Source: Octopus bimaculoides (Eukaryota). Taken from it: 62,723 nt of DNA. Below, in pieces: positions 2,961 to 52,269 of this stretch. The notes beneath the pieces were generated by a model. It did not search any database. It was not told where the DNA came from and saw only the letters and a list, made by a program, of their open reading frames with translations. Where the stretch lies: NCBI RefSeq assembly GCF_001194135.2, contig NC_068993.1, positions 58,975,024 to 59,037,746 on the forward strand, read 5' to 3'. The first letter of the stretch is position 1. Every line of letters starts with the position of its first letter. Both the position numbers and the translations under genes were made by a program.

Positions 2961-4311
2961 GAACCCCTGACTTCTATTTCTAACACAGTTTCAATGTTTC
3001 ATCCACTGCTCCACTGAACCTATCATGAGAAGGTACTGAGTTCAATCCAACCCAAAGATTAAACATCCATGTATAAAGATATATAGATATCTTATCAATA
3101 GAGCAGTGTTGCCTCTGAAAGATGAAGCCATCCATGTTACTGTAACACAGCAATTTGTTTCATACATCATATACCCAACCTCTTTGTTCCATAATCTGGC
3201 TGTCCACCCAATCAATGGAACAGCTTGTTCAAGAATTAATGTTTACGTGGTTGAGCACTCCATAGACCTGTGTATCCTTAACATAGTTCTCAAGGAGATT
3301 CAGTGAGATACAGAGGGTAACAAGGCTGGCCCTTTGAAATACAGGTACAACTCATTTTTGCCAACTGAGTGGACTGGAGCAACGTGAAATAAAATGTTTT
3401 GTTCAGGGACACAATGCATTGCTGGGAATGGAACTCACGACTTTATGATCATGAGCCAAATACTCAAGCCATTAAGCCACATCATAATGAAGGTACAGCA
3501 TAGTCAGTCCCAGGTGAAACCAGAAGTACAGTATGTCTTGGATGTAAGGTAACCAAGTGTTTTCTGTCCTAAGCATCAGGCTGGTTACCTCTGTTACTGG
3601 CTGTACCTTAACAGACGAGCTCACAAAGGATGCAACACTGACTATTTGTCAGCAACAATAATAATGACAATAACAATATCAGTGGCCTGAATAAAGCAGC
3701 AGGTTGGCAGAATCGTTTGCTTGATGGCATTTCGTCTTCTTTACGATCTGAGTTCAAATTCCGCTGAGGGAGACTTTGTCTTTCATCCCCTCAGGGTCGG
3801 TAAAATAAGTACCAGATAAGTACTGGGGTCAATGTAATCAACTTTCCTCCCCTTCCGAAATTGCTGGCCTTGTGCCAAAATTTGAAACCAATACTATTGG
3901 CCTGAGTTAGTTGTTACTGCTTCACAATAGGCTTGTCCATTTTAAGTTACAACAGCAACACCAGTTACAATAATAATAGTTATAATAATAATAATAATAA
4001 TAATAATACCATTAACAACAAAAACAACAAAAATTAGCCACCTTAATTAGTTTATTTTATAATTCATTTATGGATGTTTTTTTTTTTTTCCACCCCCTTC
4101 AAAATTTTCTAAAATCATTTTCCATATTTATTTTCATTTTCATTTTTCTTTGTTTGATCTTCCTACGTTACCGTCTTGCATTCTCTTGGTTCTTCCCTGT
4201 CTGTGTGTTAAAAGTTAATTCATCATTGGGTTATAAATTTGAGACTATTCTATAATTAGTAAAATGATTTTTGTGTCTCAGAACCTTGGTAACTATGTAA
4301 TAAAACCCAAG

Positions 4312-4347
4312 TGACAGTCAGTACCAATGCTAGAACTCTTAACATGG
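4312..4347 (+). CDS. Candidate Fat microexon (36 nt; alternative 30-nt start at 4318), (V)TVSTNARTLNM
   Basis: Perfect donor ATGG|gtaagt at 4348. In-frame acceptors are caag (4311) and cag (4317). The exon is symmetric phase 1 and stop-free, but its polypyrimidine tract is weak. Confidence 0.45.
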
Positions 4348-4609
4348 GTAAGTCATTCAACAATAACCCTGCACAATTTCCGGCAATTCCTACTTTCAGT
4401 TTTTTTTATATTTTTGTTTTTCTTTGGCGTTTTTGTATTATTATTATTATTATTATTAGTGTTATTATTACTATTATGATTGTTGTTGTTGTTGCTATAT
4501 TTTTTTGTTAGTTTTCTTTAAATTAAAAAAGAAATTTTTTTTTTCTCTTCTGTTCAATCACTGCTGTTTTAGTTTTGAACTTTGTGTATGTGTGTATGTA
4601 CATATATAT

Positions 4610-4650
<41 letters not shown>

Positions 4651-4806
4651 TATATATATATATCTGTTTGTATGTATATACACACATAAACAGATGTGTG
4701 TATTTACAATGATGGAATCTGCTGTTTTGCAACATTAAAGAGCACCTATTCAGTTTCCCCGCTTGATTCTAGCTGTTTATTATCAACGCATTTTGCTATA
4801 TATAGG

Positions 4807-4869
<63 letters not shown>

Positions 4870-5216
4870 AAAATTATGTGTGTAACAACAAAAAAAAAGT
4901 AGATCTCAATATTGAAATGGTGGAATATATTTGATATAAGATACAACCATGGAACACTCACAATACTTGGAGTTTCTCCAGAAGCCACACATATGAAGTT
5001 ATCCAATTTCTAGACATTAAATACCAATTTAAAGTTGGATGGTTTCATATCCACAGCTGCCAAGACACTCTGAGTACTGATTCTTAATGTCCCATGCTTA
5101 TATTTTATACATATATATACATATGTATGTATATATATATATATGTATATGTGTATATACATACACACATGCACACACAATGTTCACTACGTAATTTTTT
5201 GAGTTTTTTCTGAGGG

Positions 5217-5257
<41 letters not shown>

Positions 5258-7421
5258 TGTTCTTTAGTTTGGAACAAATTTCTTATAGGAGAATCTTTTA
5301 TACTTTCTAATACCTACCTGGATGATGTAGTTGATGTAGATGATGTAGAAAATGATGATGATGATGATGATGGTGATGATGATGCTGATCGTAGTGGTGG
5401 TACTGTTGTAATTTTCGTGTACATGCATAGTTGTAATAGAAATGGTGGCCAGTGAACAATCAGACGCGACTGTCCTAACCCACAACCAATGCTGAAGTTT
5501 ACTACCACCATTCATTGTACCAGTAATACACTGAGGCGTCAGTAGCCTACTGGACAAGAATGTTGTTACTCTTAGTTTAGAAAGAACATGTACACTGTTC
5601 GACTATGTACACTTTTGGAAATAATAATAATAATAACAATAATAATAAATATTCAATGCTGAATGGAGATGAAGCTGAAAATTTAAAGAAAATGAAAAGA
5701 ATGAAATAGTGTTATACGAGATTAATATTGACTAGAAATTTTAAGAACTTCATAATAAGTATGCTAGGTAGAAATAAATTAAATAGGTTTATTCCGTGTA
5801 TCTTCTTTATTTCTTAATTTCATATTCAAATTTGTAATCCCACCAAATAATATGAAGAAATGGTTATCTTCCTTGTATTAACTGCCTGCTAGTTCAGGAA
5901 AGCTTCAAATAATGATCTTGTTAGGTTGTCAGGTAATAAAAGCTCTGAAGTTATTTGTAGTACTAAAACTACTGTAGTTATAAACTGCAGTAATTATAAT
6001 AACTTTTCACGTAGATATAGGTCCAGAAATTTGCCAGAGTAGTTCACTGGTTATGCTGACCTTAGTCCTTGACTACTCTTCTGTGGTTTCCAGCAATGTC
6101 CTGCAAAATGCAAGCATTTCTCTGTAATGATGTCAATAAACATTGTCATATAATCTTTGTATGCTCTGATATGTTTTCTACAAGATTGTCTAAAACATTA
6201 GAATTTTCCTTCTAGCTACTACATTTATGCTAGATATAAACTACTCTAGTTATAAGTTCTCATATTAACTCATCTAAAAATTTTACACTCGAGGGAGCTT
6301 TAGGGACCAATTAAAAAGGGATCTGTGTCATGTTTAAATTTTTAAAGAAATCAGAGGACGATTTGAAATGAAAATAAGGTCATTATTTCATTAATATGGC
6401 CCAATTAAACTCAGCACTGGGTGCTGACAAGATATTCTTGGTTAATTAATATTCAAGTATTTGATCCCATCCATTTGTTGCTTTCAAGAAAGCTGGGTCT
6501 TTAAATCATAAACTGAAACACACAGCGAGAATTTTTAAAGTTTTTCAATTCTACTTCATCTATATCTAGACAGACAGACAGACACATATATGCATAAGCA
6601 GGCATACATCAGCATACACTTGCACTCATACGTATTACACAAATACATTGTTATGAAACTAAAATGAAAAAGAGCTGATATGTGCCTGTAGATGCTCCAT
6701 CATAGCTTATACACTGTGAAGAACATGTTTGTAAATATACACCATACATAGAGACATGAACATACTTGGACTTTCTGTGGAGAGCATTTGAGGGGTTTTT
6801 TTTTTTAAATCATAAGATAACAAGAGTTAATATTCCTCCTCAGGTCACCCAAAAATGCCCTTAAGTATGTTTTCTTATTCAGTTATAGACCCATTATAAA
6901 TATTCATTTATGTACAGAGCTGAGACAGGCTTTAAACCAAAATAAACTGAGATTAACTTTACATTAAACTATACATAACTTACCTTTTCATTATATTAAT
7001 GTAAACATGACTAAATCTTTCTGTGACTATTGATTCAAGTTTAAAGCTTAACTTAACATGCATACTTAGGCATACTGGATCTGATGAGGATGTAGGGAAA
7101 TCTGATATCAGTACAGTGTAATGCTTGATGTTTTTAACACCCAAATAATTCCCCACAGCAAGACTAAGTATGTTTCACTTGGTATTTGGTTGAACTGGTG
7201 ACATAAAATTTCATAAAGCAATCAAAATGTCGGAATTTCTTCAAAGTCCTGATGGTTTGTGGCTACCGTTTCTTTGAGTTTTGGTATGGTATGATTGTTG
7301 TTCTGTGTTCTATTTGCAGCTATGTCATCATAGCTTACTAACACTGCATCATTATGATTATTATTATTATTAGTATTATTGTTTTTCTATTTTTCCGTTT
7401 TTGTTTTTTTTCCTTTCACAG

Positions 7422-7442
7422 TGAATCAGGATAAAAGAAAAG
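7422..7442 (+). CDS. Candidate Fat microexon (21 nt), (V)NQDKRK
   Basis: A ~40-nt T/C tract ends tttcacag, TACTAAC lies at 7336-7342, and the donor is AAAG|gtagtt. Symmetric phase 1, stop-free. Confidence 0.62.
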
Positions 7443-7991
7443 GTAGTTCTTTGTTTTTATGCTCCAAACTCCCAGCTCTTACGGAAAAAAAAAAAAGAAA
7501 TATACATATATAAATATTCATAAATCAATGCATAAGTGAGACAAAAAAAATTGCAAAAAAAAAAATCACTTTCTGCTCTTTGTTCTACAAAAGATTTTAA
7601 TAACGACAAAATATATTTATATACATACACACATATCTATTCTGCTTGTATGTTTTCTTGACCTACATTATTACACCATATGGACATAGGATTAGTTAAA
7701 TTCATACCTCTACACACATGTACGTATATATATATATAAATATATATAAGCACATGTAAATATGCACATGTACATAAATATGTATTATTTAATAAATACA
7801 GTTTATATCTTTTTGTGAACTGCTAATAGTTTCATGCGATGAAAACAACTCAGACAGCATTTTATAACATGTCTGGTGCCTTCACACAATCCTCAGGCTC
7901 ACAGAAAGATATGTATTGTGTTCATTAAATATTGTTTATCTCACACCAGATAGAGAATCTTTTTGTTGACCTTCGCATCACAGAAAAGGTA

Positions 7992-8051
<60 letters not shown>

Positions 8052-8179
8052 GTATGCATGCACATGTATATGTATGTATGCTCACATATATGTGTGTATG
8101 TATGTATATATATAGATATATGTATATATATGCACATATATGTGCATATACACTCTCATGTGTATGTGTATATATATAT

Positions 8180-8619
8180 ACTAGAGTGAGTCAAAAAGTA
8201 ATGCCATTTTGTTTAGGACAGGTATAATTACCAACCCAGGAAATGTATTTCCACCTGCCCCGTAAAATTCTGTTGACTGTTCTTTGAGACACTTCTTCAC
8301 TACAGTTTTCACTTCCTCGTCACTGGAATAATTTAGCGCCTTCAGACTATGGCCCCATGAAAGAGGGTTTGAGAGGCAAACATTATTCCAGTGACCAGGA
8401 AGTGAAAATTGTTGTGAAGAAGTGGCTCGAAGAACAGTCAACAGAATTTTACGGGGCAGGGATACATGCTCTCATTCCAAGGTGGAACATTGCAATTGAG
8501 AGAAACGGTGATTATGTTGAGAAGTAGGGATGTGATCCACAGAGGACCAGATTCATTTTGATGTATGATACATATTCCTGTGTTGGTAATTATACTTGTC
8601 CTAAACAAAATGGCATTAC
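8180..8619. mobile_element. Mariner-derived foldback made of two inverted 3' ends
   Basis: Inverted arms 8198-8242/8575-8619 (43/45 identical) and ~8255-8335/8383-8460. The + arm encodes EVKIVVKKWLEEQSTEFYGAGIHALIPRWNIAIERNGDYVEK*, a mariner transposase C-terminus. Confidence 0.85.
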
Positions 8620-9323
8620 ACCAATACAATTTATATGTGTCTGTATATGTATTTATGTACATATGTATTTGCATATACATGCGGACACACATGTATGCAT
8701 AAAATTGGTATAGATGACAAACAGTTGACTGCCAGACATTCACATTTATGTAATACCTCATTTATTTGGCAAGGTGCATAAATTTGCTTTCCTCAGTCTG
8801 CTTGGCTGACAACTTTTATACTCTTAGTCTACATTTTTATAGCTTCAAGCTGTAAGTTGCATTCAGCTTTAAAAGCAATTGCTTTCAAAAGCTTTTTAAA
8901 CTATTATAGCTTCAGCAATATGCAAAGTATATATAGGTAGGTATTTATAGAGATATACATAGGTATATATACATACATACATACATACATATATATATAA
9001 ATATATATATATATATATTTACACACACACACATATATGTATACATACACACAAACATGCATACATACATACATACATACATACATACATACATACATGC
9101 AACCAAACATACAAAGTAAATTTAGTTGGGTTAGATGGTAGGGAGAAAATGTAATGTTACTATTTCATTCAGTGTTGCTTCATCTTTCTCACGCCAAAAT
9201 ATTTGGAAGTTTTGAAATTGGCTTTAAATCTTATTTTTCCAGGATCAGTGAATTAATGGTGCACAAGAACTACTATATGTATATACATACATACACATTC
9301 ACCTGGCTGAAACGAATACAACT

Positions 9324-9374
<51 letters not shown>

Positions 9375-9456
9375 GTGTGTGTAGATATACTTATATATAT
9401 ATGTATGTGTGTGTGTGTGTGAACATATGTGTGTCTAAGAAAATATATAAACAGAC

Positions 9457-9491
<35 letters not shown>

Positions 9492-9810
9492 TATATATAT
9501 ATACACAAAATGGGACAAGGATGCAAAGAATCCACACATACATATATATATATATATATATACACATACATACATATATATATATAGACACACATGTACA
9601 TATATATATATACATACACACACATATGTACATATGTGTGTATATATACAGGTATATACACAGATGTAATATGTATATATATCTTATATATGCGGATGTG
9701 AACAGGTATGTGTGTGTGTATATATATATATATATACACACACACACATGTGTACATATATGTATATATGTATGCATATATATTATAGATGTGTCCATAT
9801 ATGCACACAC

Positions 9811-9844
<34 letters not shown>

Positions 9845-10093
9845 GCACATATTCACATATATACACATATATATACATATGTTTATGCGGTCACAAACAT
9901 TGAATTTGGTTAGTATGTCAGTGATTCAAAAAAAGTTTCGCTTCATCTTCATGCATTCATCCATTTTTCTTTCCAGCCCTCTTTCTCTCTCATTCTCTCT
10001 CTCACTCCAGCTCTCTCTCTCTTTTTCTCTCTCTATCTTTCTCTTTCTCCCCCAACTTTCACAAACATTTCGCTGTTTTGTTTCGTAATCTAG

Positions 10094-10156
10094 ATGGACA
10101 TCATACGTTTCGGAATACCTTTGGTAAAATTCTCAAGGACAACAAAATTCGTGAAG
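10094..10156 (+). CDS. Candidate Fat cassette exon (63 nt), (D)GHHTFRNTFGKILKDNKIRE
   Basis: A long pyrimidine tract ends aatctag and the donor is GAAG|gtatcc. Symmetric phase 1 and complex protein-like sequence amid low-complexity DNA. TGCATG lies at 10320-10325 downstream. Confidence 0.65.
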
Positions 10157-11068
10157 GTATCCTTATCATTATTATTATTATTATTAATACTTTTTTTTTC
10201 CACTGCAAAGGACTGATTTTTATATATTTTTTTCCAACTAAAATAGTTTATAATAAATTCTTATCCCCCCCCCCTTTTTTTTTTCCTTATGTTGCTAATT
10301 CATTTCTACTGATCCATTTTGCATGGTATTATTTAGAATGAAATTAATTATAACGACTCAGAAATAACATTAATGCCTGTTTGATGTTTGTTTTTGTCTT
10401 GTAAACATTAAACAAACAGGCAAATTAAATTATTAATCATTAATAATCTATGATGGAATGCAGCTTTGCTTGAAAATGAATTTTGAAAAAAAAAGAAAAA
10501 AGAATAAAAAGGAAACTATTTTAACTATGACAAAATCTGATACGTTTAATCTGTTAGGAAGGTTCATATCTGTTTTTATCTGTTGTTGGTTTAGTCTGTT
10601 TAATCTGTCTTAAAGCTTAATTTATCTGTTATAAGTTTTAATCTATTATAAGGTTTTATCTTAGTTCTTTGTGGTTTTTAGAAAACATTGGAATCCCTTT
10701 TTCAGTTTTTTATTTATCTTTGATTTTCTATTAAAAGCATTTGCAATTTTGTTTTAATTACCACCAATAAGAATATTTAAGCGGGAATTGTCCCCCTTTG
10801 TATGTCAGCTATGACATCACATTCTATTTGTTAGATAAGGTGATGAAATTAGAGTTTGCAATTAAAGGTTTTGTGTAAAGTATGATATCACATTCTAATT
10901 ATTCACTATATAAGGTAATATGGTGAAGCTTTGGGCCTAAGTTTTGATGCCATCTGTTATGTTATTATGGCATTGTATAACAACGCATTTATTATATAAT
11001 GTGATATGGAAAAGTTTGACATTAGAAGTGTTACATACAAAAATATATGGAGAAAAATAGTGTGTGTG

Positions 11069-11270
11069 TGACACCATTTTCAGCATGGCTGTTGCCAGTA
11101 CCGCGTGACTGGCCCTCGTGCCAGTGGCACTTAAAAAGCACCCACTACACTCTTGGAGTGGTTGGCGTTAGGAAGGGAGCCTGGTGTAGCCATCTGGTTC
11201 ACCAGTCCTCAGTCAAATCGTCCAACCCATGCTAGCATGGAAAGCGGACGTTATACGATGATGATGATGA
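11069..11270 (+). mobile_element. 5'-truncated RTE 3'-UTR copy
   Basis: Ends ...gtccaacccatgctagcatggaaagcggacg...(GAT)n. Confidence 0.85.
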
Positions 11271-14036
11271 CATACACAAATATGTATGCCCTTTCTTTCA
11301 AACTTTAACCTCTCAACACTAACATACAAAGCCACCTTCCTCTGTACTATAGTCTGACTTAGTCGAGAGACATCTCCATCTTGTGAGTTACATAGCTACC
11401 TCACTAGTGCTGGTGCCATGAGAAAAGTACTCAATACACATTATTTTGTGGTAGGCATTAAAAAGGAAATCCAGTTGCAGAAATCATGCCAAAGTAGTTA
11501 AAAGTACCCAGTGTTCTCCTCTGACTCACTGGATCCTGTTAACCCATCCAACTTGTGCTAGTATGGGAAACAATCTTAAATGATGTGGAGATTTTTTATT
11601 CCTCCTGATTTTTCATGCTAGGGGCATAATGAGATCTATTCAGTCTTCATTATAACACATACACAACATTGAACTTGGCCTGTCTTTTCTCTTGTCGTTT
11701 GTGCAAGTTGTCTCAGACCATGATAATCAATCCAGATCCATCCAGCATATTTGATTTTTAATTAAGCCCTTCACTCGTTATGGAGCGTAAGCCATCAATG
11801 ACTTCTCTCCATTTGTCCTTCATTCTGAGTTGCTTTTCTTCTCTCAGATCTTGTTGCATTTGAATTGCTTTCAATGTTTCGGTAGCTTTGCTTTCTTTCT
11901 TGGAAAGGGTGTTTAGCTCTACACAATCTGATTTTTACCTCTTTGAAAAAGCAGTCCATCATAGTCTGGTCTCTATTCTTTGATCTGTCCAACATGGGAG
12001 GACTTACAAGGAGTTTGCACTCTGTTGAAATAGCTATCAGTGTCATTGAGACCCACAAGCCACCACAACTAGAGCTGGGCATTGTGGTGGAAGCCAATAC
12101 ATGCGAGCATGGAAAAAAATTGGCATAAAATAAGGATGATATATGAGTATGAAAGCGTGTGTGTCTGTTGATTAGGTTTCATTATAAATTGTAGGTTTGT
12201 TTTTTTTTTCTTTTCTCAATTCAGTTTCCCCAACACTTTATGTGTTTTCTCAAAAAACTAACAGACCTTAGTCAAAGTAGTATGGCTTGTTCGTTCTAAC
12301 AACAGTTAAATGACAACAAAAGCAGAACAAAATGAGCAATTCAATTTTCATTGTTATTATTGTTACTGTTGCTACTATTACTACTACAATTGCTTCTATT
12401 ATCACTTACTACCACTACTATTACTGTTAGTATGAAATAACATAGAGATGACTTTTAATTTGTTAATGAACGCATTAACCAACACATTGCTAAATCAACA
12501 TTATTGGTAAATTTATTGTTTTTGATGTTGATGATAATGGCAATAATGACGATGACACTGTTGATGATTGTGATATTAATTTTAATGATGTTCATGATGA
12601 TGTTGTTGCTGTTGCTGTTGTTGTTGTTGAGTGTCAAGTCAGTTCTGATTGAGCAGTAAAAAAAGTAAAGTTACCGTCCCGAATCATGCAAACTCATAAG
12701 GGCCGGTTTCCCAGTTTCAATGGCATATAAATTCCCCACCTGGACAAGTCGCCAGTCTCTCGCACAATCATGCATATTTGACAGCTGAGTGGACTACAGC
12801 AATGTGAAATGAAGTGTTCTGCTCAAGAATACAATGCGCCGCCCGGTCCAGGAATTGAAACCGCAATCTTATGTTCATGAGTCCAACACTCTAATCACTA
12901 AGCTATGTGCTGCCACATTGATCAGCCATAAAGCATGTAGGCTAGATAACAAGATGCAACTCACAGATTCAACTTTTCTGCCCTACCATGTCTCCCTGAA
13001 GCTGAGACCCTTACAGAATGCTCTAATATGCAGTGGGAAATTGTATGGCATGCTGTATGATAGAATCCACATAATTATACCTCTCCACTGTCCACTCTCT
13101 CTGCTATCCACTCTTTCCACTGCCCACTTTCTCCACTGTCCACTCAGTATTTGAAAGGAGAGAAAATGATTTTGGACAAAAGCAGCAAATTCTAAAAACT
13201 AAAGAGCCAAGAGAGAATGTTCTATTTCAAAGTAATGTTTATCGCCACTTCACCATGGCTGTTCCATACGAACTGGCATTACTATCATTTTTTTTAACCC
13301 CCAAGAGGATGCCTCCTGCAGCTGGTTATCAATGCAATCTGCACCCAACATATATTGCAAGTTTGGGAGCAAACTCCTACTATCTTCTAGCAACTTGACA
13401 GGACCACTAGGCTGGCTGGCTTCAGGCTATTTTTGCCCATCCTCAGCAGTGGATACTTGTCTGCTAACCTCAGGTTGGCTTCAGTCCAGCAGGTTTTTGG
13501 TCAAAGACATTTTAGCTGTCACAATCATGCCATTTATTCAAACATGGTGTACTTAAAACTACCATATTGAATGTGCCCTTCTTTTAGGTGTTTGGTCCTG
13601 AGTTAACCTTGGCTGAGAAGGCCTTGTTATTGTGTTTCTTGCTTATCATGGCACACGTGAAAGCAAAACCCAGTCTTCAGCAAGGGGACACTACTTCACT
13701 TTCTCCCTGCTATGATGGCCTAAATAGCCTGTTGGTTAACTACTACAATTAACCAAATAATCCGTTGGCTACTTGGATCTAAGGTGAGAAAACCCCAGGT
13801 AGTTTGACTTTCGTAACTACCAAATAAAGGGTTTCTGCATATGTGTGAAAGTTGGTATGTGTGTATGTGACTAAACATGAGAATGTGAGTATGTGTTTGA
13901 ATGTGTATGCATGTATGGAAGTGTGGAGATGCTTGTATATATGTATACTTCCCAGGACTAGTCAAGCCATATATATTCTGGAAAGAACCAAAGAAAGACA
14001 GGTGTGTGTGTGTGTATATTTGCATATTTAAAACAG

Positions 14037-14116
14037 AGAGTGCAAGCAGACAGTTAAGTGGACAGTCGGACAAACAGTCTAACAAACAGCTACAAACAGT
14101 GATAAGACACCAGTAA
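14037..14116 (+). CDS. Candidate alternative truncating terminal exon of Fat, (E)SASRQLSGQSDKQSNKQLQTVIRHQ*
   Basis: Acceptor ttgcatatttaaaacag. The phase-1 reading is open to TAA at 14114-14116, overlapped by AATAAA (14116-14121), with a long T tract ~35 nt downstream. Confidence 0.33.
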
Positions 14117-14152
14117 ATAAAAGACTAGCGAATACCTATTATCAAAGAATTT

Positions 14153-14190
<38 letters not shown>

Positions 14191-15372
14191 TTATTGTTTT
14201 TTTTTTCTCCTGTATGCAATGAATGACTCCAGTCTAATGCTTTGATCTTTGACTTTTGACCTTTGCCTTCTAGAATGATCTTGAGTATTTCATATTATCT
14301 TGGCTAGTTGGCATGACAGTTCTTGATAATATTCTTTCTTTTATCTTGCATTGGACATCTTTGATTCAATTTATTTTTTCAAGACGTCTCTTTGTTGTTT
14401 TGTTTTGTTTTGTTTTTTGTTTATATTTTTCCTTTCGATTATCATTTTATATTTATTTAATTATTGTTTTTTTTTATTTGTTCTTACATGTTGATGCCAA
14501 ATCTCTTTACATTCTACATAGCATTTAGAAATTTGGTTTGGTTTGATCAAGTCTTTAAATGAGACAAGAACGAAAATATTATATTATTATTATGTTTCCC
14601 AAACAACCAAAGAATCTATTTTGAATAAATTGGTCTTTTTTCAATATTTTTTTGACCATTTATCTTTTCATGACTTTTTTTATATTTCAATAAAAAATGT
14701 AATAAAAATAAAAAAAACAGAAATATTTCTAATAGTAATATATTTTATGAGTTTGTAAACCTAAGGTCAATGTAGTGAGTGTCTATCAAGTGAGGTTGAC
14801 TATTCTTTCTGGTGAGCAAGTTTGCATCCTACTTGTGAGTCTGACAGCAAGATCTCAAAGATGTTAATGTGACTATATATATATATATATATGTGAATGT
14901 TTTAGCACCCACTCGCATATATGTGGCTGTTTTACTACACGCACACACATATATACATGTATGTATGTCTGTGTGTGTATGTATGCTAAAATAACAGGCT
15001 TTAAAATTTTAGCCGTTGTTAAAATTTGATACCCCAGAAGCACAAGCTAAACAACAACAAAAACAACTGATTATAGACAAAGGTTATTGTTTTAGGTTTT
15101 ATATCTGCTTTTAAGATGTTGATCCAACCAAAATATACATATATTTTGATTGTTTTGTTTTTCTTTTATTCTATTCTTTTTTTCTTCTTTTTTTTGTTTT
15201 GGTCTTAGCTAAATATTGTCATCAGGATTAAAGAATAAAATTTGATTTTTAGTAAGAAACATTCATTTGACTTTAGCTATGTGAATCTCAAAAATGTTTG
15301 CTCAGAATTGGTATTTTTAGGTAGATGCTGTGACTCAAATTAAAATATTTTTTCTATTTTATTTCAATTCTA

Positions 15373-15700
15373 TGTGCCAGTGGTGCGTGAAAAGACATTC
15401 GAGCGAGTTCGTTGCCAGTACTGATGGACTGGCTCCTGTGCAGGTGGCATGTAAAATACACCATTTCGAGCATGTCCGTTGCCAGTACCTCCTGACTGGC
15501 CTTCGTGCCGGTGGCACGTAAAAGCACCCACTACACTCTCAGAGTGGTTGGCGTTAGGAAGGGCATCCAGCTGTAGAAACTCTGCCAAATCAGATTGGAG
15601 CCTGGTGTAGCCATCTGGTTCACCAGTCCTCAGTCAAATCGTCCAACCCATGCTAGCATGGAAAGTGGACGTTAAACGATCTTGTTGATGACGATGATGA
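15373..15700 (+). mobile_element. 5'-truncated RTE 3'-UTR copy
   Basis: High similarity to the other copies; GAT tail. Confidence 0.88.
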
Positions 15701-16253
15701 ATTCAATGCAATGGAAATAAATAAGAATCGCATTTGACAGAATAATTTGAACGATACATAGGAAACCCAAGAAAACTTCCTGAATAAAAATGGTTGTAGA
15801 ATTGGGTTTTAAAATCAGGGGTATTGAGGAATATGAAGAATATGATTACATTTTGATGCAGTGTCTAGAACTGCAGTGGGGTGGGAGAGATAATGCATCA
15901 CTGTTGTCATCAAATTGGATTTTCAAAGAAGATGTCAAGGCAAATGAAACGATTTTAGGTGAAGGATTAGCACGAGGAGATATATTGTGGGTTGTTGATT
16001 AGTTTCATAGTTCTGTCTCAATCAAAGACTTGATCAAATGACTATCCCATAAATTTTCATCAGCCACAGTTATGTAGGCTCACATTATCTAATGTGTCCT
16101 TCATTACTGTTCCCAGAGGTCTGACTCAACTGAGCAGATCAAAGATCAAAATTATTCCAATCCTAACCATCCTACACTTCTATATTTAAGAGATGAGGAA
16201 TTATTTACATTATTTACAATTGACGGATATTTGTCCTCATCTTGTTTGTTGTT

Positions 16254-16299
16254 AACACATCATTTCGGCTGATATACCCTCCAGCCTTCATCAGGTGTC
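16254..16299 (-). ncRNA. Degenerate antisense copy of the same hammerhead
   Basis: GACAC-CUGAUGA-A-GGCUG/CAGCC (perfect stem II)-GAAAU-GAU-GUGUU. Stem III and the cleavage triplet are mutated. Confidence 0.65.
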
Positions 16300-16398
16300 T
16301 TGGGGAAATTTCGAACGGGCATATGGCATAGTGGTTAAGAGCGTGGGCTATTAACCCCAAGATTCTGAGTTCGATTCCAGGCAGTAACCTGAATAATG

Positions 16399-16443
<45 letters not shown>

Positions 16444-16491
16444 TCGAAAAATACCTTAGGAATGAGAACCCAGGTTCGAAATTTCCCCCAA

Positions 16492-16537
16492 GACACCTGA
16501 TGAAGGCTGGAGGGTGTATCAACCGAAACGTTGTGTT
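16492..16537 (+). ncRNA. Minimal type-I hammerhead ribozyme motif
   Basis: GACAC-CUGAUGA-A-GGCUG/loop/CAACC-GAAAC-GUU-GUGUU. Stem I GACAC:GUGUU is fully paired, stem II has one mismatch, and stem III is the palindrome ACGU (dimer type). Confidence 0.75.
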
Positions 16538-17374
16538 AAGAACAAACAAGATGCGAACAAATATCCAACAATTGTAAATAATTTAACTAACCATGCTGTC
16601 AATTTGTTAAGACAGTATATCTAGGACTACATTATCCACTATATTCACCCCTGATTTTGTTGTTTAACACCAGGTCAATCATGATGTTGTGGACCAATAA
16701 TAATAATAGGTATTGCAAGTCTTCTGTTCAGGAATTGTCTACCTTAGAGTATATTAATTAACATTTCCTTTCCTTGTCGTTATTGTTTAACATCAGTCCA
16801 GTCCTAATCTAACAGATTTTTATCACCAAAGGTTTTTCAACCAAACCAAACCAAACCAAACCAAACCAAACCATTTTTTGTTTGTTTGTATTTTTTTTTT
16901 TCAGTCTTATAGTATTATAGTATCCAATATATTATTATAGTATTATAGTATCCAATATATCCTTCCATTTTTAAGACAGTACAGTGTAATTAGCTGCCAC
17001 TTTTAGCAGATCAAGTGATCAAGTAGAAGCTGCCTTAGTAACTCATAAATTCATGGTGGTCAGGGTGGGGCATCTTTTTTTTTTTCTTTTGCTAATGGTA
17101 AAACTGAACCAAAACTGGATTCTTTGAGCAGCTGATTACTTCAAAAACATTTCTTTCTCAGAAAAGCATTCCGTAAGGGCTGTGTGTGTGTGTGTGTGAG
17201 TGAGTGTACATGTGTATGTATGTGTGTGTATATGTGTAATACATTTTAATACCTTTTTCTTACCCTTTGCCTTTTCATTTTGATCTTTACGAAAGTTTAT
17301 AAGCATATATATATTATATATACACACATCTGTACATATATATTTATATATGCAAATGTATATGCATGTGTGTG

Positions 17375-17405
<31 letters not shown>

Positions 17406-18401
17406 GTGCACTCATACACTCACATATACATATATATGCACATATACATGTATATATGTACATAGTTATATATATACATATATATATTATTGAAATGTTA
17501 AATACACTACTGTGTCGCCATCTATTGATCATCCAACCCTCTGCATGTCTTATTAATATATCATCACCTCCTTCACTTCCCCTACACATCCTCCACCTTC
17601 ACCTCTTTTACCTGCCACTTTTTCTTGTTTTTTTTTTATTTATTTATTTATTTTCTTGACCTCATCTCCATGTCATTATCGTCGTCGCCACCACCACCGT
17701 CACCTCTCACTTTATTTCACGTCAAAACTTGCACCTATCATCTTTGTATCAGTCGTCACTTTGTCATCACCGTCATTGCTCTTGTTGTTGTTGTTGTTGT
17801 TAGCTATGCACATGCACCTCTTTTCAAACTTTTTCTATGCACTTGTTAATCTTTTTTATATAGTGACCATCACCTAAGAATTCAAGTCTAATTGTAGACA
17901 GACTCGTTCACCAAACTTTGTTTAATATTATCACATTTCACCTTTTTCTTCTTCTGCTTTTTATAATTATATATATATATATATTATTACTATTATTATT
18001 AGTATTATTATTACTATTGGTATTGCCTTTTCTCTGATGTTGTTCTCATTAATTATTTCTGTCATTTTCTGAGGTTTAGTTTTTTTTTTTGTTTTTTTTT
18101 TTTGCTTTTGCTTCATTTTGGGGAGGGTTACCTTTGTGGTAACATTACTGTAGCTATTCTTTTTTTTTTTTAGCATTATTATTATTATTATTATCATCAA
18201 AGGTGGTGATCAGCAACCTGGCAGAATTGTTAGCATGCCGGACAAAATGCTTAGTGGCATTTCATCTGTCTGCATGCTCTGAGTTCAAATTTTGACCTAG
18301 CCATCGATAAAATTAGTAGCAGTCAATCATTGGAGTTGATGTAATTGACTTACACTTCTCCTCTGATCATTCTGCTTTTGTGGCAAAATTTGAAACCATC
18401 A

Positions 18402-18445
<44 letters not shown>

Positions 18446-18533
18446 TAGTTTTATTTTTATAGTGTGCTTTCACTTCACTATCGAGCACAGCTCTGTGTGC
18501 CTTGGGTGTGTGTTGTAGTTTGCTGTGATGCTC

Positions 18534-18564
<31 letters not shown>

Positions 18565-21212
18565 AAAAGTAGTGAACTGGCCGAATCCCTCGCACATGGG
18601 ACAAAATGCTTAATGGCGTTTTTTACAGCTCTTTACATTCTGCTGTCATCTTTTCAGGATTAGTATCCCTTTAGCATTTCAACTGGCCATATCTGGCCCA
18701 AATATTCTACCTGTGTCTGTCTTATGTTCAAACTGACCAGGTCTGGCTTCTTACAACAATCCTACATCATCACTCTAAAACTAAGCAGTCACATCATGAA
18801 GCTACGAGATAACATGTGATTAATTCAAAACAATGTGAAATAATAAGCCATGACATTTGATAACATTATCTGAATGCTAAAAGGATAAAATAAATACCAG
18901 CTGAACACTGACGGAGGTGTTATTGTAATCAATCACTGACCCTCCAAAGTTGCTGGCTTTGTGCCAAAATTAGAAAGAATTATTAATATTCTGCCACTGT
19001 TACTACTAGTTTCACAAAGTAACTGTCATATACTAGGGTTATTTACTTCATTCTATTTTTCATCTTCAACATTTAGTTTTCTACTTAAGAGTAATTAAAT
19101 CAGACACTCCCTGATATCAAAATCAGCTTCAAATTTTGTTCTGTTTTGTTCTTTTTCTTTTTTCTCCTTCCTTTATCATTACTAATATTATCATTATTAT
19201 TATTATCATCATTATTATTATTATCATTATTATTTTCGCTTTTACATTCATTTTATTCTGGGAGAGTTTTTAAAATGGTATACTTTCATTCCCACTACCC
19301 ACTACTGACATAACTATTTCTGGTTTCCATTTTTTTTTTCTTTCAGTTTTCAGTTTCTCTTGTAATTTTCAGCCTCTTATAACAAATCTCTTTCAGTTAC
19401 AGTTCCCTTTTTTTCTTTAATAGCCTTTCCAATAAGACCACCCTGCCTGGAACATCCATACCAAAATGTTCATTTTTAAGCTATAATTATAATTGTCATT
19501 ATATTTACAATGATATTAGGAGATTTCAGTTGATCCAATCAATATTTATATGTTGATTTATGTATACACCTATCAATATTTAAGTTAGAGATAGTCGTGA
19601 CCATAATTCCACCTCTGTGGAATTATGGTCATAAAAGTCTTCATTTTTTCAGAGACTTGCTGACTCTGTTTACATAAGTTCTTAACATTTTCTCAATAAT
19701 ATTTTCAGTCACACTAACCCTTGTAAATATTCTTGTTTCAATATTCCCCTTATCCAGTACAAGAGTTGACCATTTAACTTCAAGAGGATTGACAATTTTC
19801 TAACTACTGTTAAAAATGGAAGGCAGAATCTGTCAATTGATATATTGCTGTATATAGTTTAGATTCTTCGTTTGACTTGGCTTTTATTACCTGAGGTCAA
19901 TAAAATAAAGTACCAATCAATTAATGGTATCAGTATGATTTTCGGTCTCTCCTATCGAACTTCTAAATTTGTGCCTCTGTAAAAATGATGAGATGGTGCA
20001 TTGCCTGAATCGTTAACGCATCATACAGAATACCTTGAAGTAGTTGTTCTGACCTATTACATGCCGAGTTCAAATTTCACTTGGGCCAGCTTTGTCATTC
20101 ATTCTTTCAGAAATGATAAAAGGGTGGTCAAATATTGGTGGTGGCTGGAGGGGGTCAGTTTGACCAAAGTCCTCACACATGTGTCCCCTGCAAAAGTTAG
20201 CAATCGTTTAGGGCCAGAGTAAAGAAATCAACTGGTGTGAAACTTTGGTTAGAACGCAGTGCTTAAGGAGGGCAAGACATGAACTATTAACATTACTGCT
20301 TGCCGTTTGCTATCCCAGCCAATAAACCAGCTGTAGTCACTTTGAAAACATATTGCGATACAACAAATTTCTTTATAAGTTAATAAAATTAGTTAAACCC
20401 ATTTAAAAACATTTTATTTATTTTTTTTTTTTTTAGAATTTCATTTTCTGTTTACTTAGGATTAATATCATTTAATTTTTCCCTTTTCCCTTCTCTTTTT
20501 ATGCCCAATTTTTTTTTCTGTTTATATGCCAAAAAAAAAGATTAATTTAATTTTTCTTTTTTCTTTCTTTCTTTTTCTACCTACCTTATTTTTCTGGATT
20601 CCTCTCTGCAGAAAGCCAAAAATATCTGATTTTTTTTCCTTTCTTCATTTAGCATTTTATTCTCTCTCAGATGGAAATAGTCAGCATTTTAAGAACCAGA
20701 GCCAATTTTTTTTTCTTTTATATAAATCATAAATCTAATTTTATAGCTTTAAATTTTTGCCAGTTCCCTTTTGCATTTTTTTTTTTTTTTTTTTAATTTC
20801 ATTTCATTATTAAATTTATGTTTATTATTTTTTAATCTCTTAATTTCTGATATCTTGTGCATATGTGATGTCATGCAATAATATGAAACCCTTTCATTGC
20901 AGTTTTTAATGTAATATTGCTTTTATTAAATTTATACTTCGGTATATTTATCTGTCTATCCTATATATCTGTCTGTTTGTCTATCTATCTATCTATCTGT
21001 CCATCTATCTATCTATCTACCTACTTATCTATCTGTATGTCTGTCTGTCTCTCTATCTATCTATATATATATATCTATCTATCTATTTCTATCTATCTAT
21101 CTGTATGTTTATCCAACTATCTATTTATCTAACTGTCTGTCTGTTTGTTTGTCTAACTTTCATGCTATTTGTCTATGTACATGTACGTCTGCTTGTCTAG
21201 GTCACTTTGCTC

Positions 21213-21253
<41 letters not shown>

Positions 21254-21532
21254 TAAGGATATTGTTTCCATTATGAATTGTTCTGCCGCATTATTTCATT
21301 TTGTTTTCCATCTTTTATTGTTAAAAATAATTTCCCTGCCATGCATCTCTTGTATTCTCATTTTACTGTTTTGTTGTGAAAGAACTTGATCTTTACTCTT
21401 GCATGTAATTATGATTTTTAACTTCATGAATTCATTAATGTTGTACAGCAAGGGTGGACATTGATTGAAAAAAAAAAGGTGAGAGTGATTAAAAGGAATT
21501 GAGACAAAGGTGTATGTGTGTGTGTGTGTGTC

Positions 21533-21564
<32 letters not shown>

Positions 21565-22585
21565 TGGAAAAAGAGTACAAGCCATGGTTGAGAAAGTGTG
21601 CTGTAAGACTGAGAGAGAGACAGGGAAAAAAGAGATTGGTGTTATTCTATCTTGATTACTAATTAGTCATTCTATTTTACCTTCATGGTTCCTCAGGTAA
21701 AACCAGAATGGAGAATGTAGGCCTTTAGTTCACATAGATCTACGTTATATGATACTAAAAAGTTTATGCAACTTCCTAGTATGGTTTAGGAAGTCATATT
21801 GAGATCAATGGTAATTTGTTATCCATCTTGAAGAATCCTGCAATAAAGTCTACCAGCAACACTTGAGTCAAGAATAAGGTTTCAATTCTCCAAGTGCCTA
21901 CTCTGACATTTTACCTTGTTTGGTTGTAAAAAAGGCATAATTGTCCTAGAATCACACATCAAGCATATAACCCTGCTTGCTTCAATATTCCTACTCGACA
22001 ATCAGACTCTGTTTGCTTCACAAGTGACGGATTTGCAGTAGAATAAATATGAACGTAGCTGTTGGAACAATAACTCCAGAAATAAGCAAATGAACCACAG
22101 AAAGCGAGGAAGAATAGTGGCTGTCGGCATTGTTGTTTAACATGCCAGAGGTAGCAGCCAGATCTCCCTCGAAAATTAAACTGTACCAGTTTAAAAAGAG
22201 GAGACATATGTACATCCAGAATAATGTTGCAGTCCTGAATATAATCTACCTTAAATAAGAACAGGCAAGCAAAATCTATGGTACAGGTTCAATACTTAAG
22301 TAAGTCATTTTCGCTAGATTTGTTCCTTAGGTCTGTAATGTTTGTTACCTGGAAGTTAATTACCTGGAAGTTAATTACCTGGAGAGAAAAAAGCTGGATG
22401 CTGTCAAGCTGGGGGCATATAAGCCCTCGACAGAAAAAAGTAGGATTTCCTGTATGCATAGGACTCAAACAAAGAGATGTGGGTTCAAGTCCCATGCATA
22501 CGGGAAAGCTTATACGCCCTGTTATTAGACTATTTTCGTTAGTCATTGCACGGTGATTGCTATAGGCTTTAAGCTTATAATATAC

Positions 22586-22616
<31 letters not shown>

Positions 22617-22629
22617 TATGGCCCATAAA

Positions 22630-22996
22630 TAGCACCATTAGAGCCAAATCGTTACCAGCGTTGCCTTCTAGTACTTGTGCTGGTGACACGTTAGAAAATC
22701 ATTCGAGCAAGGTCAATGCCAGTGCCGCTGGACTGGCTCCCGTGCAGGTGGCATGTAAAATACACCTTTTTGAGCGTGGCCATTATCAGTACTGTGTGAC
22801 TGGCACTTAAAAGCACCCACTGCACTCTTGGAGTGGTTGGTGTTAGGAAAAGCATCCAGCTGTAGAAACTCTGCCAAATCAGATTGGAGCCTGGTGTAGC
22901 CATCTGGTTCACCAGTCCTCAGTCAAATCGTCCAACCCATGCTAGCATGGAAAACGGACGTTAAACGATAATGATGATGATGATGATGATGATGAT
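22630..22996 (+). mobile_element. 5'-truncated RTE 3'-UTR copy
   Basis: Same family; long (GAT)n tail. Confidence 0.88.
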
Positions 22997-23247
22997 TGCT
23001 AACTTGTTCTTGTCATGTTCCAGGCAGGCTTTGATTGTATCAGGCTTGTAATGAAAGTCAATCCATCCATGATCTATATGCAGAATTACATTTGGTGGGA
23101 GGGTCTGGGATTCTTAATTACATTTCAACAATTTCGTAGCCGCATTCAGCAAGGTTATACACTACAGTCAGGCTTCTTACATTCTCCAATCTGGTTCTTT
23201 CTTGTTCCCTACTAAACTCAAACGACACCAGTTCAGTTTTTAAGCAG

Positions 23248-23274
23248 GTACCCGTTTATTGTCCCCTTTCAAAG
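23248..23274 (+). CDS. Candidate Fat microexon (27 nt; NAGNAG 30-nt alternative from 23245), (G)TRLLSPFK
   Basis: Perfect donor AAAG|gtaagt at 23275 and acceptor tttttaagcag. Symmetric phase 1. Competing upstream AGs (23231, 23236) would give frameshifting exons. Confidence 0.58.
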
Positions 23275-23823: not shown

Positions 23824-24530
23824 GCTATCATTGGGACACCTCAGACTGGGCGGCTCCACACACCACGTTACCAAACATCAGTGAGGTACCAGTGAAAGAA
23901 ATTTTGGATTCTCCAAGCTCCACTCCACAGAGTAATGACTCAAACACGCATGTAGATGATGTCAATGATGCTGATATGGACGACATGGATAACGACTCTG
24001 AATACTGCGGGGATTGTGAATGTGGCGAAAACGACGACGACAACAACGCTGCCGACTTCCATCCTGCTGCCAACTTCCACCATTTCCTTGAATTAGCGCC
24101 TTATGCCGATGAGGTCAACGAGGGACCTCAGCGGTTCCATCCTAACTTCATGCCGGACTTCGACCAGCCACCTGGTGGTGCTGCCCTCGACAACTGGCCA
24201 GCTCCACCGGGCGCTGAAAACGGCAACCAGCCACCACATAGTGATGAAGAGGAGAACAGCGAGAGGTGCCGGTTGCGGCGTCACCTACGTAGGGGTGCTG
24301 CTCTAGCTAGGTACCCTCCACTCGATGCCAGCGACTATGAACATTCAACGGCAGCAATGGCGGACGACATGAGTGTGTCGGTGGGCGGCTGTACATCGAC
24401 GAACGTCTCTTGCTCTGACATTTCCGGACTCTGTGACATCGATGACAGTGATATGAACATTACAGATGAGAGTGACAATGACATCCATCCTGTGAAGTTT
24501 AACAGCGCCCACCTTCACACCCAGGTGTGA
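23824..24530 (+). CDS. FAT1: Terminal coding exon of a Fat1/2/3-type (Fat-like) atypical cadherin; cytoplasmic tail
   Basis: A pyrimidine tract and tttcag acceptor end at 23823. Phase-1 translation gives (G)YHWDTSDWAAPHTTLPNISEVP...QRFHPNFMP...MSVSVGGCTSTNVSCSDISGLCDIDDSD...HLHTQV*. This matches vertebrate FAT1 motifs recalled from memory (GYHWDTSDW, QRFNLNQYLP, SCSDVSACCEVES, C-terminal PDZ ligand HTEV). The gene is best regarded as co-orthologous to FAT1/2/3. Upstream constitutive exons lie outside the window. Confidence 0.93.
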
Positions 24531-34714: not shown

Positions 34715-34900
34715 TTAGGCACTTCTGCTAGATTTATCCTTTGTGAGTGTGATATAGGCGCTTTGAATGGTAATGAAATGTTTACTGGCAATTTCCTTCA
34801 TCTTGGGGTCTTTGTGTCTGTCGGGATGCCATTCTTTGACCAGTTTTCGGTAACTGCTTTTGATTTCTTGCAAAGATGCGTTATGATGTAAACCAAGTAC
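34715..34900 (-). CDS. DNAJC22: DNAJC22 coding exon 3; J domain
   Basis: Acceptor ttttggaacag|GTA, then VLGLHHNASLQEIKSSYRKLVKEWHPDRHKD...FITIQSAYITL...* with the HPD motif. The spliced CDS is 1044 nt = 347 aa. Confidence 0.94.
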   Translation of the reverse strand, partial: VLGLHHNASLQEIKSSYRKLVKEWHPDRHKDPKMKEIASKHFITIQSAYITLTKDKSSRSA

Positions 34901-52205: not shown

Positions 52206-52269
52206 ACTTTCTCACCTTCCCAAGCGTTAAACTAATACACCTGTTTGTTGTTTACAAACCTGTTTTTGT

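What the first reader, a model, noticed from the sequence alone, without database searches (positions are those of the whole stretch)
4312..23274. Series of phase-1 microexons in the last intron of the Fat cadherin, at the site of the vertebrate FAT1 +12 insert
Seen: four short AG...GT cassettes of 36/30 nt (4312/4318-4347), 21 nt (7422-7442), 63 nt (10094-10156) and 27/30 nt (23248-23274). All are multiples of 3, phase 1, stop-free and end in G, so any of them joined to 23824 regenerates G-YHWDTSDW. Two have perfect GTAAGT donors and two have long pyrimidine tracts. Including all four adds VTVSTNARTLNM-VNQDKRK-DGHHTFRNTFGKILKDNKIRE-GTRLLSPFK (49 aa). Known (from memory): vertebrate FAT1 has a regulated 12-aa insert and truncating isoforms just before YHWDTSDW. 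Inference: a combinatorial, possibly neural, microexon code (up to 16 isoforms) diversifies the Fat tail in this animal, by convergent or ancestral use of the same hotspot.
Basis: partly seen in the sequence, partly recalled or inferred. Interest (0 to 1): 0.8.

Follow-up and report, generated by a model that had tools for sequence, protein, structure and literature searches.

The report
Alternative tail exons in octopus Fat cadherin
Two of the four proposed mini-exons (21 and 63 bases) are real, cuttlefish-conserved alternative exons that insert peptides into the octopus Fat1-like cadherin tail at the spot where vertebrate Fat1 and Fat3 are alternatively spliced; a third is doubtful, the fourth is unsupported, and a tail-truncating 11-base exon was missed.

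Summary
The window is Octopus bimaculoides chromosome CM046613.1. It holds the 3' 23.8 kb of a 38-kb intron before the terminal exon (23824-24530, GYHWDTSDW...HTQV*) of a FAT1/2/3-type cadherin.

All four cassettes exist as described. Sequence alone is not evidence, though: 744 stop-free AG...GT phase-1 cassettes lie in the same stretch.

- **c2 (7422-7442) and c3 (10094-10156): real.** RefSeq isoforms fix their boundaries. Sepia RNA-seq contigs carry a 21-nt and a 63-nt orthologue in the same order. c3 is 13/21 aa identical, with synonymous changes in the Fat frame.
- **c1 (..4347): doubtful.** Only its donor is supported. The proposed acceptors lack a pyrimidine tract, and better ones give an in-frame stop.
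- **c4 (23248-23274): no support.**
- **Missed:** an 11-nt exon (14274-14284) that ends the Fat reading frame (E-stop). Sepia has 84-nt and 47-nt truncating exons.

Vertebrate Fat1/Fat3 splice alternative exons into this same junction and so disrupt a Kif5-binding DNxYH motif. Their insert peptides are unrelated to c2/c3. A scallop isoform has an 8-aa basic insert at the same place.

Verdict: a new member of a known kind. "Neural" and "16 isoforms" are untested.

The parts
4312..4347 (+). c1: exon whose donor (4347|GTAAGT) is used in RefSeq models.
   Evidence: Proteins X2, X3, X5 and P0034 all start at ATGs inside 4328-4346 and join at 4347 to c2, c3 or the last exon. No Sepia counterpart was seen.
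7422..7442 (+). c2: 21-nt in-frame alternative microexon, phase 1-1, encoding VNQDKRK (basic).
   Evidence: Both junctions are in XP_014780830.1. It has the best acceptor and ranks 2nd of 744 chance cassettes. Sepia contig L014 has a 21-nt exon TGAGACGGGGAAAAAAGAAAG (VRRGKKK) between E_B and the c3 orthologue, 14/21 nt identical. Scallop isoform X4 has AARRKKNK at the same junction.
10094..10156 (+). c3: 63-nt in-frame alternative exon, phase 1-1, encoding DGHHTFRNTFGKILKDNKIRE.
   Evidence: It is in XP_052828471.1 and in isoforms X1-X5. The orthologue DEQRILRNSFGKILKDNNVRE is in the S. pharaonis model CAE1313885.1 and in 9 Sepia RNA contigs. Identity is 47/63 nt and 13/21 aa, with 4 synonymous codon changes and 9 of 16 differences at third positions; the other frame has a stop in Sepia. 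tblastn of the Sepia peptide on the 59-kb octopus locus hits only c3, E = 3.7e-6. It is skipped in L006, L021, X6 and P0034.
After any upstream exon ending in G it reads GAA TGA (E-stop) and gives a tail-less Fat isoform.
   Evidence: Isoform X6 (MILS|YHWD = ATG ATC TTG A|GC) fixes the 14284 donor. The acceptor ttgccttctag scores +3.4. Isoforms X1, X2 and X4 need a 7-nt version (14274-14280), which is unexplained.
23248..23274 (+). c4: candidate 27-nt cassette (GTRLLSPFK). Most likely a chance AG...GTAAGT open frame.
   Evidence: It ranks 1st of 744 on a crude splice PWM. It is absent from all octopus models and from all 19 Sepia RNA contigs. There is no match in the ~9.9 kb upstream of the last exon in L002.
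23824..24530 (+). Terminal coding exon of the Fat1-like cadherin: (G)YHWDTSDW...SDISGLCDI...HTQV, stop included.
   Evidence: Translation. It is 100% identical to the RefSeq octopus proteins. Homologous last exons start at the same (G/D/A)YHWD position in many molluscs.

Best explanation
The window carries the 3' two-thirds of the large intron that splits the conserved D-x-x-G|Y-H-W-D motif in the cytoplasmic tail of the octopus FAT1/2/3-type cadherin. The intron holds a set of alternatively included short exons of two kinds.

(a) In-frame, protein-coding inserts. c2 is 21 nt and encodes a basic heptapeptide. c3 is 63 nt and encodes 21 aa with a conserved core RNxFGKILKDNxxRE. Both are conserved between octopus and cuttlefish. 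They add 21 or 28 residues directly in front of the invariant Tyr.

(b) Frame-terminating exons. These are the 11-nt exon at 14274 and probably c1 when spliced from its better acceptors. Sepia has an 84-nt and a 47-nt exon of this kind. They produce isoforms that lack the whole conserved terminal-exon tail and its PDZ-type end HTQV.

Shown: the exons, their junctions in database models and in Sepia RNA, their variable combinations, and purifying selection on c3.

Inferred by analogy with mouse Fat3 and Fat1: inclusion moves the Tyr away from the acidic, serine-rich half of a kinesin-1 (Kif5) interaction motif. This would switch trafficking or subcellular localisation of the cadherin. The truncating exons would remove tail-dependent interactions altogether.
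For: - Window identity and gene structure. The window is 100% identical to GCA_001194135.2 CM046613.1. TM exon E_A and the 141-nt exon E_B lie upstream of the window, and both end in phase 1.
- RefSeq isoforms with c1/c2/c3/e11 combinations.
- Sepia RNA contigs from 19 SRA runs, listed by what lies between E_B and the last exon: 84 nt alone (L006, L021); c3+84 (L007, L015-L020, L024); c2+c3+84 (L014); 47 nt (L008-L013)..
- The S. pharaonis annotation has E_B+c3+last.
- c3 codon pattern and tblastn specificity.
- E_B is conserved (68% aa) in a cuttlefish-like genome.
- Bivalves: the Argopecten isoform X4 carries an 8-aa basic insert, while the Tegillarca model joins directly at the same junction.
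- Vertebrate precedent and mechanism: PMC5082931. Fish FAT1/FAT3 inserts at the same junction.
Against: - No octopus RNA reads could be examined. The octopus evidence is Gnomon models plus conservation.
- The Sepia contigs were retrieved through a separately called tail ORF, so only frame-broken transcripts were sampled. Isoform proportions and the plain E_B|last junction in cephalopods are unknown.
- The octopus motif (EEDLPGYH) matches the vertebrate Kif5-ID only in D-x(3)-Y-H; the Q/S positions upstream are not conserved.
- No functional test of any kind exists.
- c2 is too short for its orthology to be statistically secure on sequence alone.
Confidence: 0.75

Rival explanations
1. All the cassettes are chance AG...GT open frames, and the database isoforms reflect splicing noise or annotation artefacts with no function.
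For: 744 equivalent cassettes occur by chance in the same 23.8 kb, and the reverse strand has as many high-scoring ones. Several Gnomon ORFs are plainly artefactual frames, for example X1, X2 and X4. c4 and the in-frame c1 have no support.
Against: c3 is conserved between octopus and cuttlefish at the level of the constitutive exons: 62% aa against 68% for E_B and 64% for the last exon. It has synonymous substitutions and an open Fat frame in both species. c2 has the same length, position and basic character in Sepia RNA.
Confidence: 0.05
2. The main role of the intron's exons is to make tail-less or unproductive transcripts, not to diversify the peptide. In this reading c1 (as a 66-nt or longer exon with an in-frame stop), the 11-nt exon and the Sepia 84/47-nt exons act as a regulated truncation or NMD switch, and c2/c3 are minor passengers.
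For: All 19 Sepia contigs recovered carry a terminating exon. The better c1 acceptors give stops. e11 gives E-stop. The 84-nt exon's stop lies 61 nt before the last junction, which is borderline for NMD. Vertebrate Fat1 also has a truncated isoform (PMC5082931).
Against: The Sepia sample is biased towards frame-broken transcripts by the way it was retrieved. c3 shows protein-level purifying selection, which a passenger would not need. Annotated octopus and S. pharaonis models join c3 in frame to the tail. The Sepia truncated end ...TTEL* itself looks like a PDZ ligand, which suggests a functional alternative C-terminus rather than decay.
Confidence: 0.2
3. c1 is not a cassette but an alternative first exon driven by an internal promoter. 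It would give short transcripts that encode only the cytoplasmic tail, starting at the ATGs at 4328 or 4344.
For: Four protein isoforms start inside c1 and none shows sequence upstream of it. No credible acceptor precedes 4312 or 4318.
Against: The same ORF starts are expected if c1 is an internal exon carrying the in-frame TAA at 4290, or if it follows the Met-less E_A fragment after the assembly gap. No transcript 5' ends were available.
Confidence: 0.2

Closest known systems
Mouse Fat3 alternative exons 24.1/24.2 (+32 aa) between exons 24 and 25 (Cheng et al. 2016, PMC5082931)
   Same: The intron is the same: the one splitting the D-N-x|Y-H-W-D motif just before the terminal exon. Short alternative exons are used, and the insert separates the essential Tyr from the rest of the motif. 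The same gene subfamily (FAT1/2/3) is involved.
   Different: The vertebrate exons are 56 + 40 bp and form an obligate pair, each frame-shifting alone. The octopus exons c2 and c3 are each 3n and appear independently includable. The peptides are unrelated: ASIVTVIRLVND... has no match in the octopus locus. Kif5B binding is shown only for the mouse.
Vertebrate FAT1 isoforms +12, +32 and a truncated form (Braun et al. 2007, J Biol Chem 282:22823; seen only as cited in PMC5082931)
   Same: Alternative exons occur at the same junction, including a variant with a premature stop. The isoforms differ in subcellular distribution.
   Different: The primary paper could not be read here. The fish FAT1 +32 peptide ASIVTVIHLVNSVVDSVEKEESFSAHEPKNSR is homologous to the FAT3 insert but not to c1-c3.
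Argopecten irradians protocadherin Fat 1-like isoform X4 (XP_069130301.1)
   Same: An 8-aa basic insert (AARRKKNK) sits exactly between ...SESEDEP and DYHWDASDW. It has the same position and character as c2 (VNQDKRK / VRRGKKK).
   Different: It is 24 nt rather than 21 nt. It is a model only, and no c3-like sequence was seen. Homology with c2 is too short to test.
Bilaterian neural microexon programme (Srrm234 eMIC-dependent exons)
   Same: c2 is of microexon size (21 nt), is in frame, and lies in a disordered cytoplasmic region of a neuronal adhesion gene.
   Different: Tissue specificity is unknown. No UGC motif lies within about 50 nt upstream of the c2 or c3 acceptors. c3 (63 nt) is above the usual microexon limit.

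Membership tests
FAT1/2/3-type (Fat-like) cadherin gene | Large ectodomain with many cadherin repeats plus laminin-G and EGF modules, encoded directly upstream on the same strand | tested here: met
   The 4314-aa upstream gene model has Cadherin, Laminin_G and EGF Pfam hits. EGF and laminin-G exons are visible in L001.
FAT1/2/3-type (Fat-like) cadherin gene | Single TM exon followed by a cytoplasmic tail with SDTDSIQKP...W..DY, YHWDTSDW and a C-terminal HT(E/Q)V | tested here: met
   The human FAT1 tail query shares GYHWDTSDW and HTEV.
Fat1/Fat3-type alternative splicing at the DNxYH junction | Alternative exons lie in the intron that separates D-x-x-(G/A) from Y-H-W-D, immediately before the terminal exon | tested here: met
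   Octopus ..EEDLP|[c2][c3]|GYHWD. Fish FAT1 ..CDDN|32 aa|GYHWD and FAT3 ..CDDN|32 aa|AYHWD. Literature.
Fat1/Fat3-type alternative splicing at the DNxYH junction | Both in-frame insert isoforms and a truncated isoform exist | tested here: met
   In-frame: X3, X5 and XP_052828471.1. Truncating: e11 (X6, E-stop in the Fat frame). Sepia: 84-nt and 47-nt exons.
Fat1/Fat3-type alternative splicing at the DNxYH junction | Alternative exons homologous in sequence to vertebrate exons 24.1/24.2 | tested here: not met
   tblastn of the FAT1 and FAT3 +32 peptides on the 59-kb octopus locus gives best E of 0.9-1.8 at irrelevant sites. Exon sizes and phases differ.
Fat1/Fat3-type alternative splicing at the DNxYH junction | Insert abolishes Kif5B binding and changes subcellular distribution | not testable with these tools
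   Needs pull-down and localisation assays. Only D-x(3)-Y-H of the proposed Kif5-ID is conserved in octopus.
Neural (eMIC/SRRM4-type) microexons | Neural-specific inclusion | not testable with these tools
   No octopus RNA-seq was accessible. The traceable Sepia runs come from studies of S. esculenta larvae and juveniles.
Neural (eMIC/SRRM4-type) microexons | UGC-containing enhancer close upstream of the 3' splice site | tested here: not met
   No TGC in the ~50 nt before 7422 or 10094. This was a visual check only.

The most novel reading that the evidence does not exclude
Regulated insertion or truncation at the D-x-x-G|YHWD junction is an ancestral bilaterian property of Fat-like cadherins. 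The switch would be retained in molluscs (cephalopods, scallop) and vertebrates while the exons themselves turned over. Within it, a polybasic c2-type microexon would be conserved across Mollusca and c3 would be a coleoid-wide module with its own binding function.
Probability: 0.3. Interest if true: 0.65.

Novelty: new member of a known kind. Interest (0 to 1): 0.45.

Why it matters
Fat1/Fat3 tail splicing is one of the few cases where a short alternative exon is known to switch motor binding and the polarised delivery of a giant adhesion receptor.

Molluscs place their own, unrelated alternative exons, including truncating ones, into exactly the same junction. That marks the junction as a long-lived regulatory hotspot and gives an invertebrate system in which to test whether the Kif5-type switch is ancient.

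There is also a practical point for annotation. This 38-kb intron and an assembly gap split the octopus Fat gene into two RefSeq genes and produced several wrong-frame protein isoforms.

Tried and rejected
- **Splice-site statistics alone.** They cannot separate real from chance cassettes. c4 ranks first yet has no support, c3 ranks 38th yet is real, and the reverse-strand control is equal.
- **Upstream constitutive exon in the window.** It is absent. It lies 14.3 kb before the window start.
- **Octopus transcripts in the protein and contig collections.** Two homology searches and three exact look-ups found none.
- **A close relative's genomic contigs (L003, L004).** They stop 89 nt upstream of the last exon, so c4 could not be tested there.
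- **Cuttlefish-like genome contigs.** L002 gives about 9.9 kb upstream of the last exon and L005 gives 2.4 kb downstream of E_B. They contain neither c1-c4 nor the Sepia 21/63/84/47-nt exons, so the intron could not be aligned. The S. pharaonis genomic locus was not on record.
- **Octopus orthologues of the Sepia 84-nt and 47-nt exons, or an ...ETTEL* end.** None found.
- **Homology of the vertebrate inserts to the octopus locus.** None.
- **The 7-nt 'NDR' exon needed by isoforms X1, X2 and X4.** The only candidate has a TT donor; unresolved.
- **Braun et al. 2007.** The paper is not held.
- **The 2026 bioRxiv splicing atlas that includes octopus.** No supplementary tables are held.


Full report
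**What the window is.** The window is 100% identical to Octopus bimaculoides assembly GCA_001194135.2, chromosome CM046613.1. Window position equals L001 position minus 24462.

The terminal coding exon starts at 23824 and reads (G)YHWDTSDW...SDISGLCDI...HTQV*. Upstream on the same strand lies a 4314-aa gene model with cadherin, laminin-G and EGF domains. It is cut off from the tail by an assembly gap inside the transmembrane exon E_A (L001 7019-7131).

- E_A ends at L001 7295 in phase 1.
- A 141-nt exon E_B (L001 9984-10124...GSEEDLP|G, donor gtacgt) also ends in phase 1.
- The intron in question runs from L001 10125 to 48285 (38 kb). The window contains only its last 23.8 kb. No upstream constitutive exon lies in the window.

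**Check of the observation.** The four cassettes are exactly as described. Their existence is not informative, however. The same 23.8 kb contains 744 AG-preceded, GT-followed, 3n-long, phase-1 stop-free cassettes of 9-66 nt. Of these, 128 end in G, and the reverse strand gives 690 with the same number of high-scoring ones. On a crude splice PWM, c4 and c2 rank 1st and 2nd, c3 ranks 38th, and c1 ranks 115th or 220th depending on the acceptor.

**Independent evidence from octopus models.** A homology search with the concatenated peptides returned RefSeq proteins of O. bimaculoides LOC106876693.

| Isoform | Composition |
|---|---|
| X3 | M(c1) + VNQDKRK (c2) + DGHH..KIRE (c3) + GYHWD... |
| X5 | M(c1) + c3 + tail |
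| P0034 (236-aa form) | M(c1) + tail |
| XP_052828471.1 (current) | E_B + c3 + tail |
| X6 | MILS + YHWD... |

These fix both boundaries of c2 and c3 and the donor of c1.

- X6 is explained by an 11-nt exon, AATGATCTTGA|gtattt, at 14274-14284 behind a good acceptor. In the true Fat frame this exon reads G|AA TGA, that is E-stop, so it truncates the protein before the terminal exon.
- X1, X2 and X4 translate c3 in another frame. They are artefacts of ORF choice in a gene model broken by the gap. In Sepia that frame contains a stop.
- X1, X2 and X4 also need a 7-nt version of the 14274 exon whose donor would be TT. I could not resolve this.
- c4 occurs in no model.

**c1.** No pyrimidine tract precedes 4312 or 4318 (taactatgtaataaaacccaag). 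Their scores are -13.1 and -9.9, against -2.9 for 4282 and -2.0 for 4215.

- An exon 4282-4347 (66 nt) would read ..EPW* in the Fat frame. This would also explain why all c1-containing models begin their ORF at ATGs inside c1.
- c1 could instead be an alternative first exon.
- The proposed in-frame insert VTVSTNARTLNM is the least likely reading.

**Cross-species evidence.** An exhaustive HMMER search with XP_052828471.1 and cluster look-ups led to three things:

- the Sepia (Acanthosepion) pharaonis model CAE1313885.1, which reads ..SESEEDLP|DEQRILRNSFGKILKDNNVRE|GYHWDTSDW;
- a 15-kb Logan RNA contig encoding a 4474-aa Fat protein that ends ..EEDLPEVETTEL*;
- nineteen RNA-seq contigs from nineteen SRA runs. 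Three of the runs appear in studies of Sepia esculenta larvae and juveniles.

The contigs show the following between E_B and the terminal exon:

| Between E_B and the last exon | Contigs |
|---|---|
| 84-nt exon with an in-frame stop | L006, L021 |
| 63-nt c3 orthologue + 84-nt exon | L007, L015-L020, L024 |
| 21-nt exon TGAGACGGGGAAAAAAGAAAG (VRRGKKK) + c3 + 84-nt exon | L014 |
| 47-nt frame-shifting exon | L008-L013 |

L022 and L023 lack E_B. They show intron-like sequence running into the 84-nt exon, which is then spliced to the last exon.

c3 is 47/63 nt and 13/21 aa identical between octopus and Sepia. It has four synonymous codon changes, and 9 of 16 differences are at third positions. 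The Sepia peptide finds only c3 in the 59-kb octopus locus, E = 3.7e-6. That is as well conserved as E_B (68%) and the terminal exon (64%).

c2 shares length, position, first codon and basic character (14/21 nt), but it is too short for statistics.

These contigs were retrieved through a separately called tail ORF. In-frame transcripts were therefore not sampled, and proportions mean nothing.

I found no octopus counterpart of the 84-nt or 47-nt exons. I found no c1- or c4-like exon in Sepia.

**Other molluscs and vertebrates.**
- The scallop isoform XP_069130301.1 has ..SESEDEP|AARRKKNK|DYHWDASDW.
- The clam Tegillarca and the snail Babylonia join directly.
- In mouse, Fat3 exons 24.1 (56 bp) and 24.2 (40 bp) insert 32 aa into the DNxYH motif that spans the exon 24/25 junction. 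This abolishes Kif5B binding and changes localisation. Fat1 behaves analogously and also has a truncated form (PMC5082931).
- A search with the human FAT1 tail recovered fish FAT1 (..CDDN|ASIVTVIHLVNSVVDSVEKEESFSAHEPKNSR|GYHWD) and FAT3 (..CDDN|ASIVTVIRLVNDAVDTIESEVSVMDQGQTYNR|AYHWD).
- The vertebrate insert is therefore shared by FAT1 and FAT3 and sits at the same junction. It shows no similarity to the octopus locus.

**Interpretation.** c2 and c3 are genuine, coleoid-conserved, alternatively included coding exons. The intron also supplies truncating exons. This matches the logic of vertebrate Fat1/Fat3 tail splicing, but with unrelated exons: either convergence on the same hotspot, or exon turnover at an ancestral switch.

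The functional step, separating the Tyr of GYHWD from the acidic stretch EEDLP and so altering kinesin-1-type binding, is inference. Only D-x(3)-Y-H of the vertebrate motif is conserved.

'Neural' and 'up to 16 isoforms' are untested or unsupported. c4 is best regarded as chance.

The exons are already present in public protein records. I found no paper describing them: the only full-text hit for microexons plus octopus does not contain the word 'Fat' in its main text.

Noticed in passing
window 34715-34936 (-) and 40946-41506 (-): A DnaJ-domain ORF (Pfam DnaJ, 1.9e-15) and a TM2-domain ORF (Pfam TM2, 4.1e-13) lie on the minus strand downstream of Fat. Together they look like a DNAJC22-type gene (TM2 + J domain) arranged tail-to-tail with Fat.
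   Followed up: partly
window 15370-15588 (-), 48943-49155 (+), 51420-51827 (+), 52269-52490 (-), 56544-56888 (+), 59194-59831 (+): A repeated ORF family (..FLQLDALPNANHSESVVGAFTCHRHEGQSGGTGNGH..) occurs on both strands. It is an interspersed repeat with no Pfam hit. One copy lies inside the Fat intron.
   Followed up: no
window 31721-31945 (+): A reverse-transcriptase fragment (RVT_1, 23.6 bits, below the Pfam cut-off) lies in the intergenic region.
   Followed up: no
L001 7019-7131 (upstream of the window): An assembly gap inside the Fat TM exon changes the apparent frame. It splits the gene into a 4314-aa model and a separate 297-aa 'Fat 1-like' gene. The Sepia-like ORF P0040 shows the exon is continuous (..SPQPPPVPNRPASYTPSNHDSLNTLNNFD..).
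   Followed up: partly
window 14274-14280 vs 14274-14284: Isoforms X1, X2 and X4 require a 7-nt exon (AATGATC) whose donor would be TTGAGT. Isoform X6 uses the 11-nt form with a GT donor. The 4-nt discrepancy is unexplained. In addition, none of the six older isoforms X1-X6 contains exon E_B.
   Followed up: partly
L006 9850-9936; also L007, L014-L021, L024: The Sepia 84-nt exon ends the ORF with ..EVETTEL*. T-E-L fits a class I PDZ ligand, like the canonical HTQV end, so this may be a functional alternative C-terminus rather than a poison exon. The exon is near-identical in contigs that differ in their tail sequences, probably two Sepia species.
   Followed up: no
window 38012-38757, 39618-40401, 46606-46887, 55881-56269 and two 10-nt runs: N gaps total 2221 bases, and di- and trinucleotide microsatellites (TA/CA/ATT runs) are abundant throughout. 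Many of the long mechanical ORFs are translations of these.
   Followed up: no
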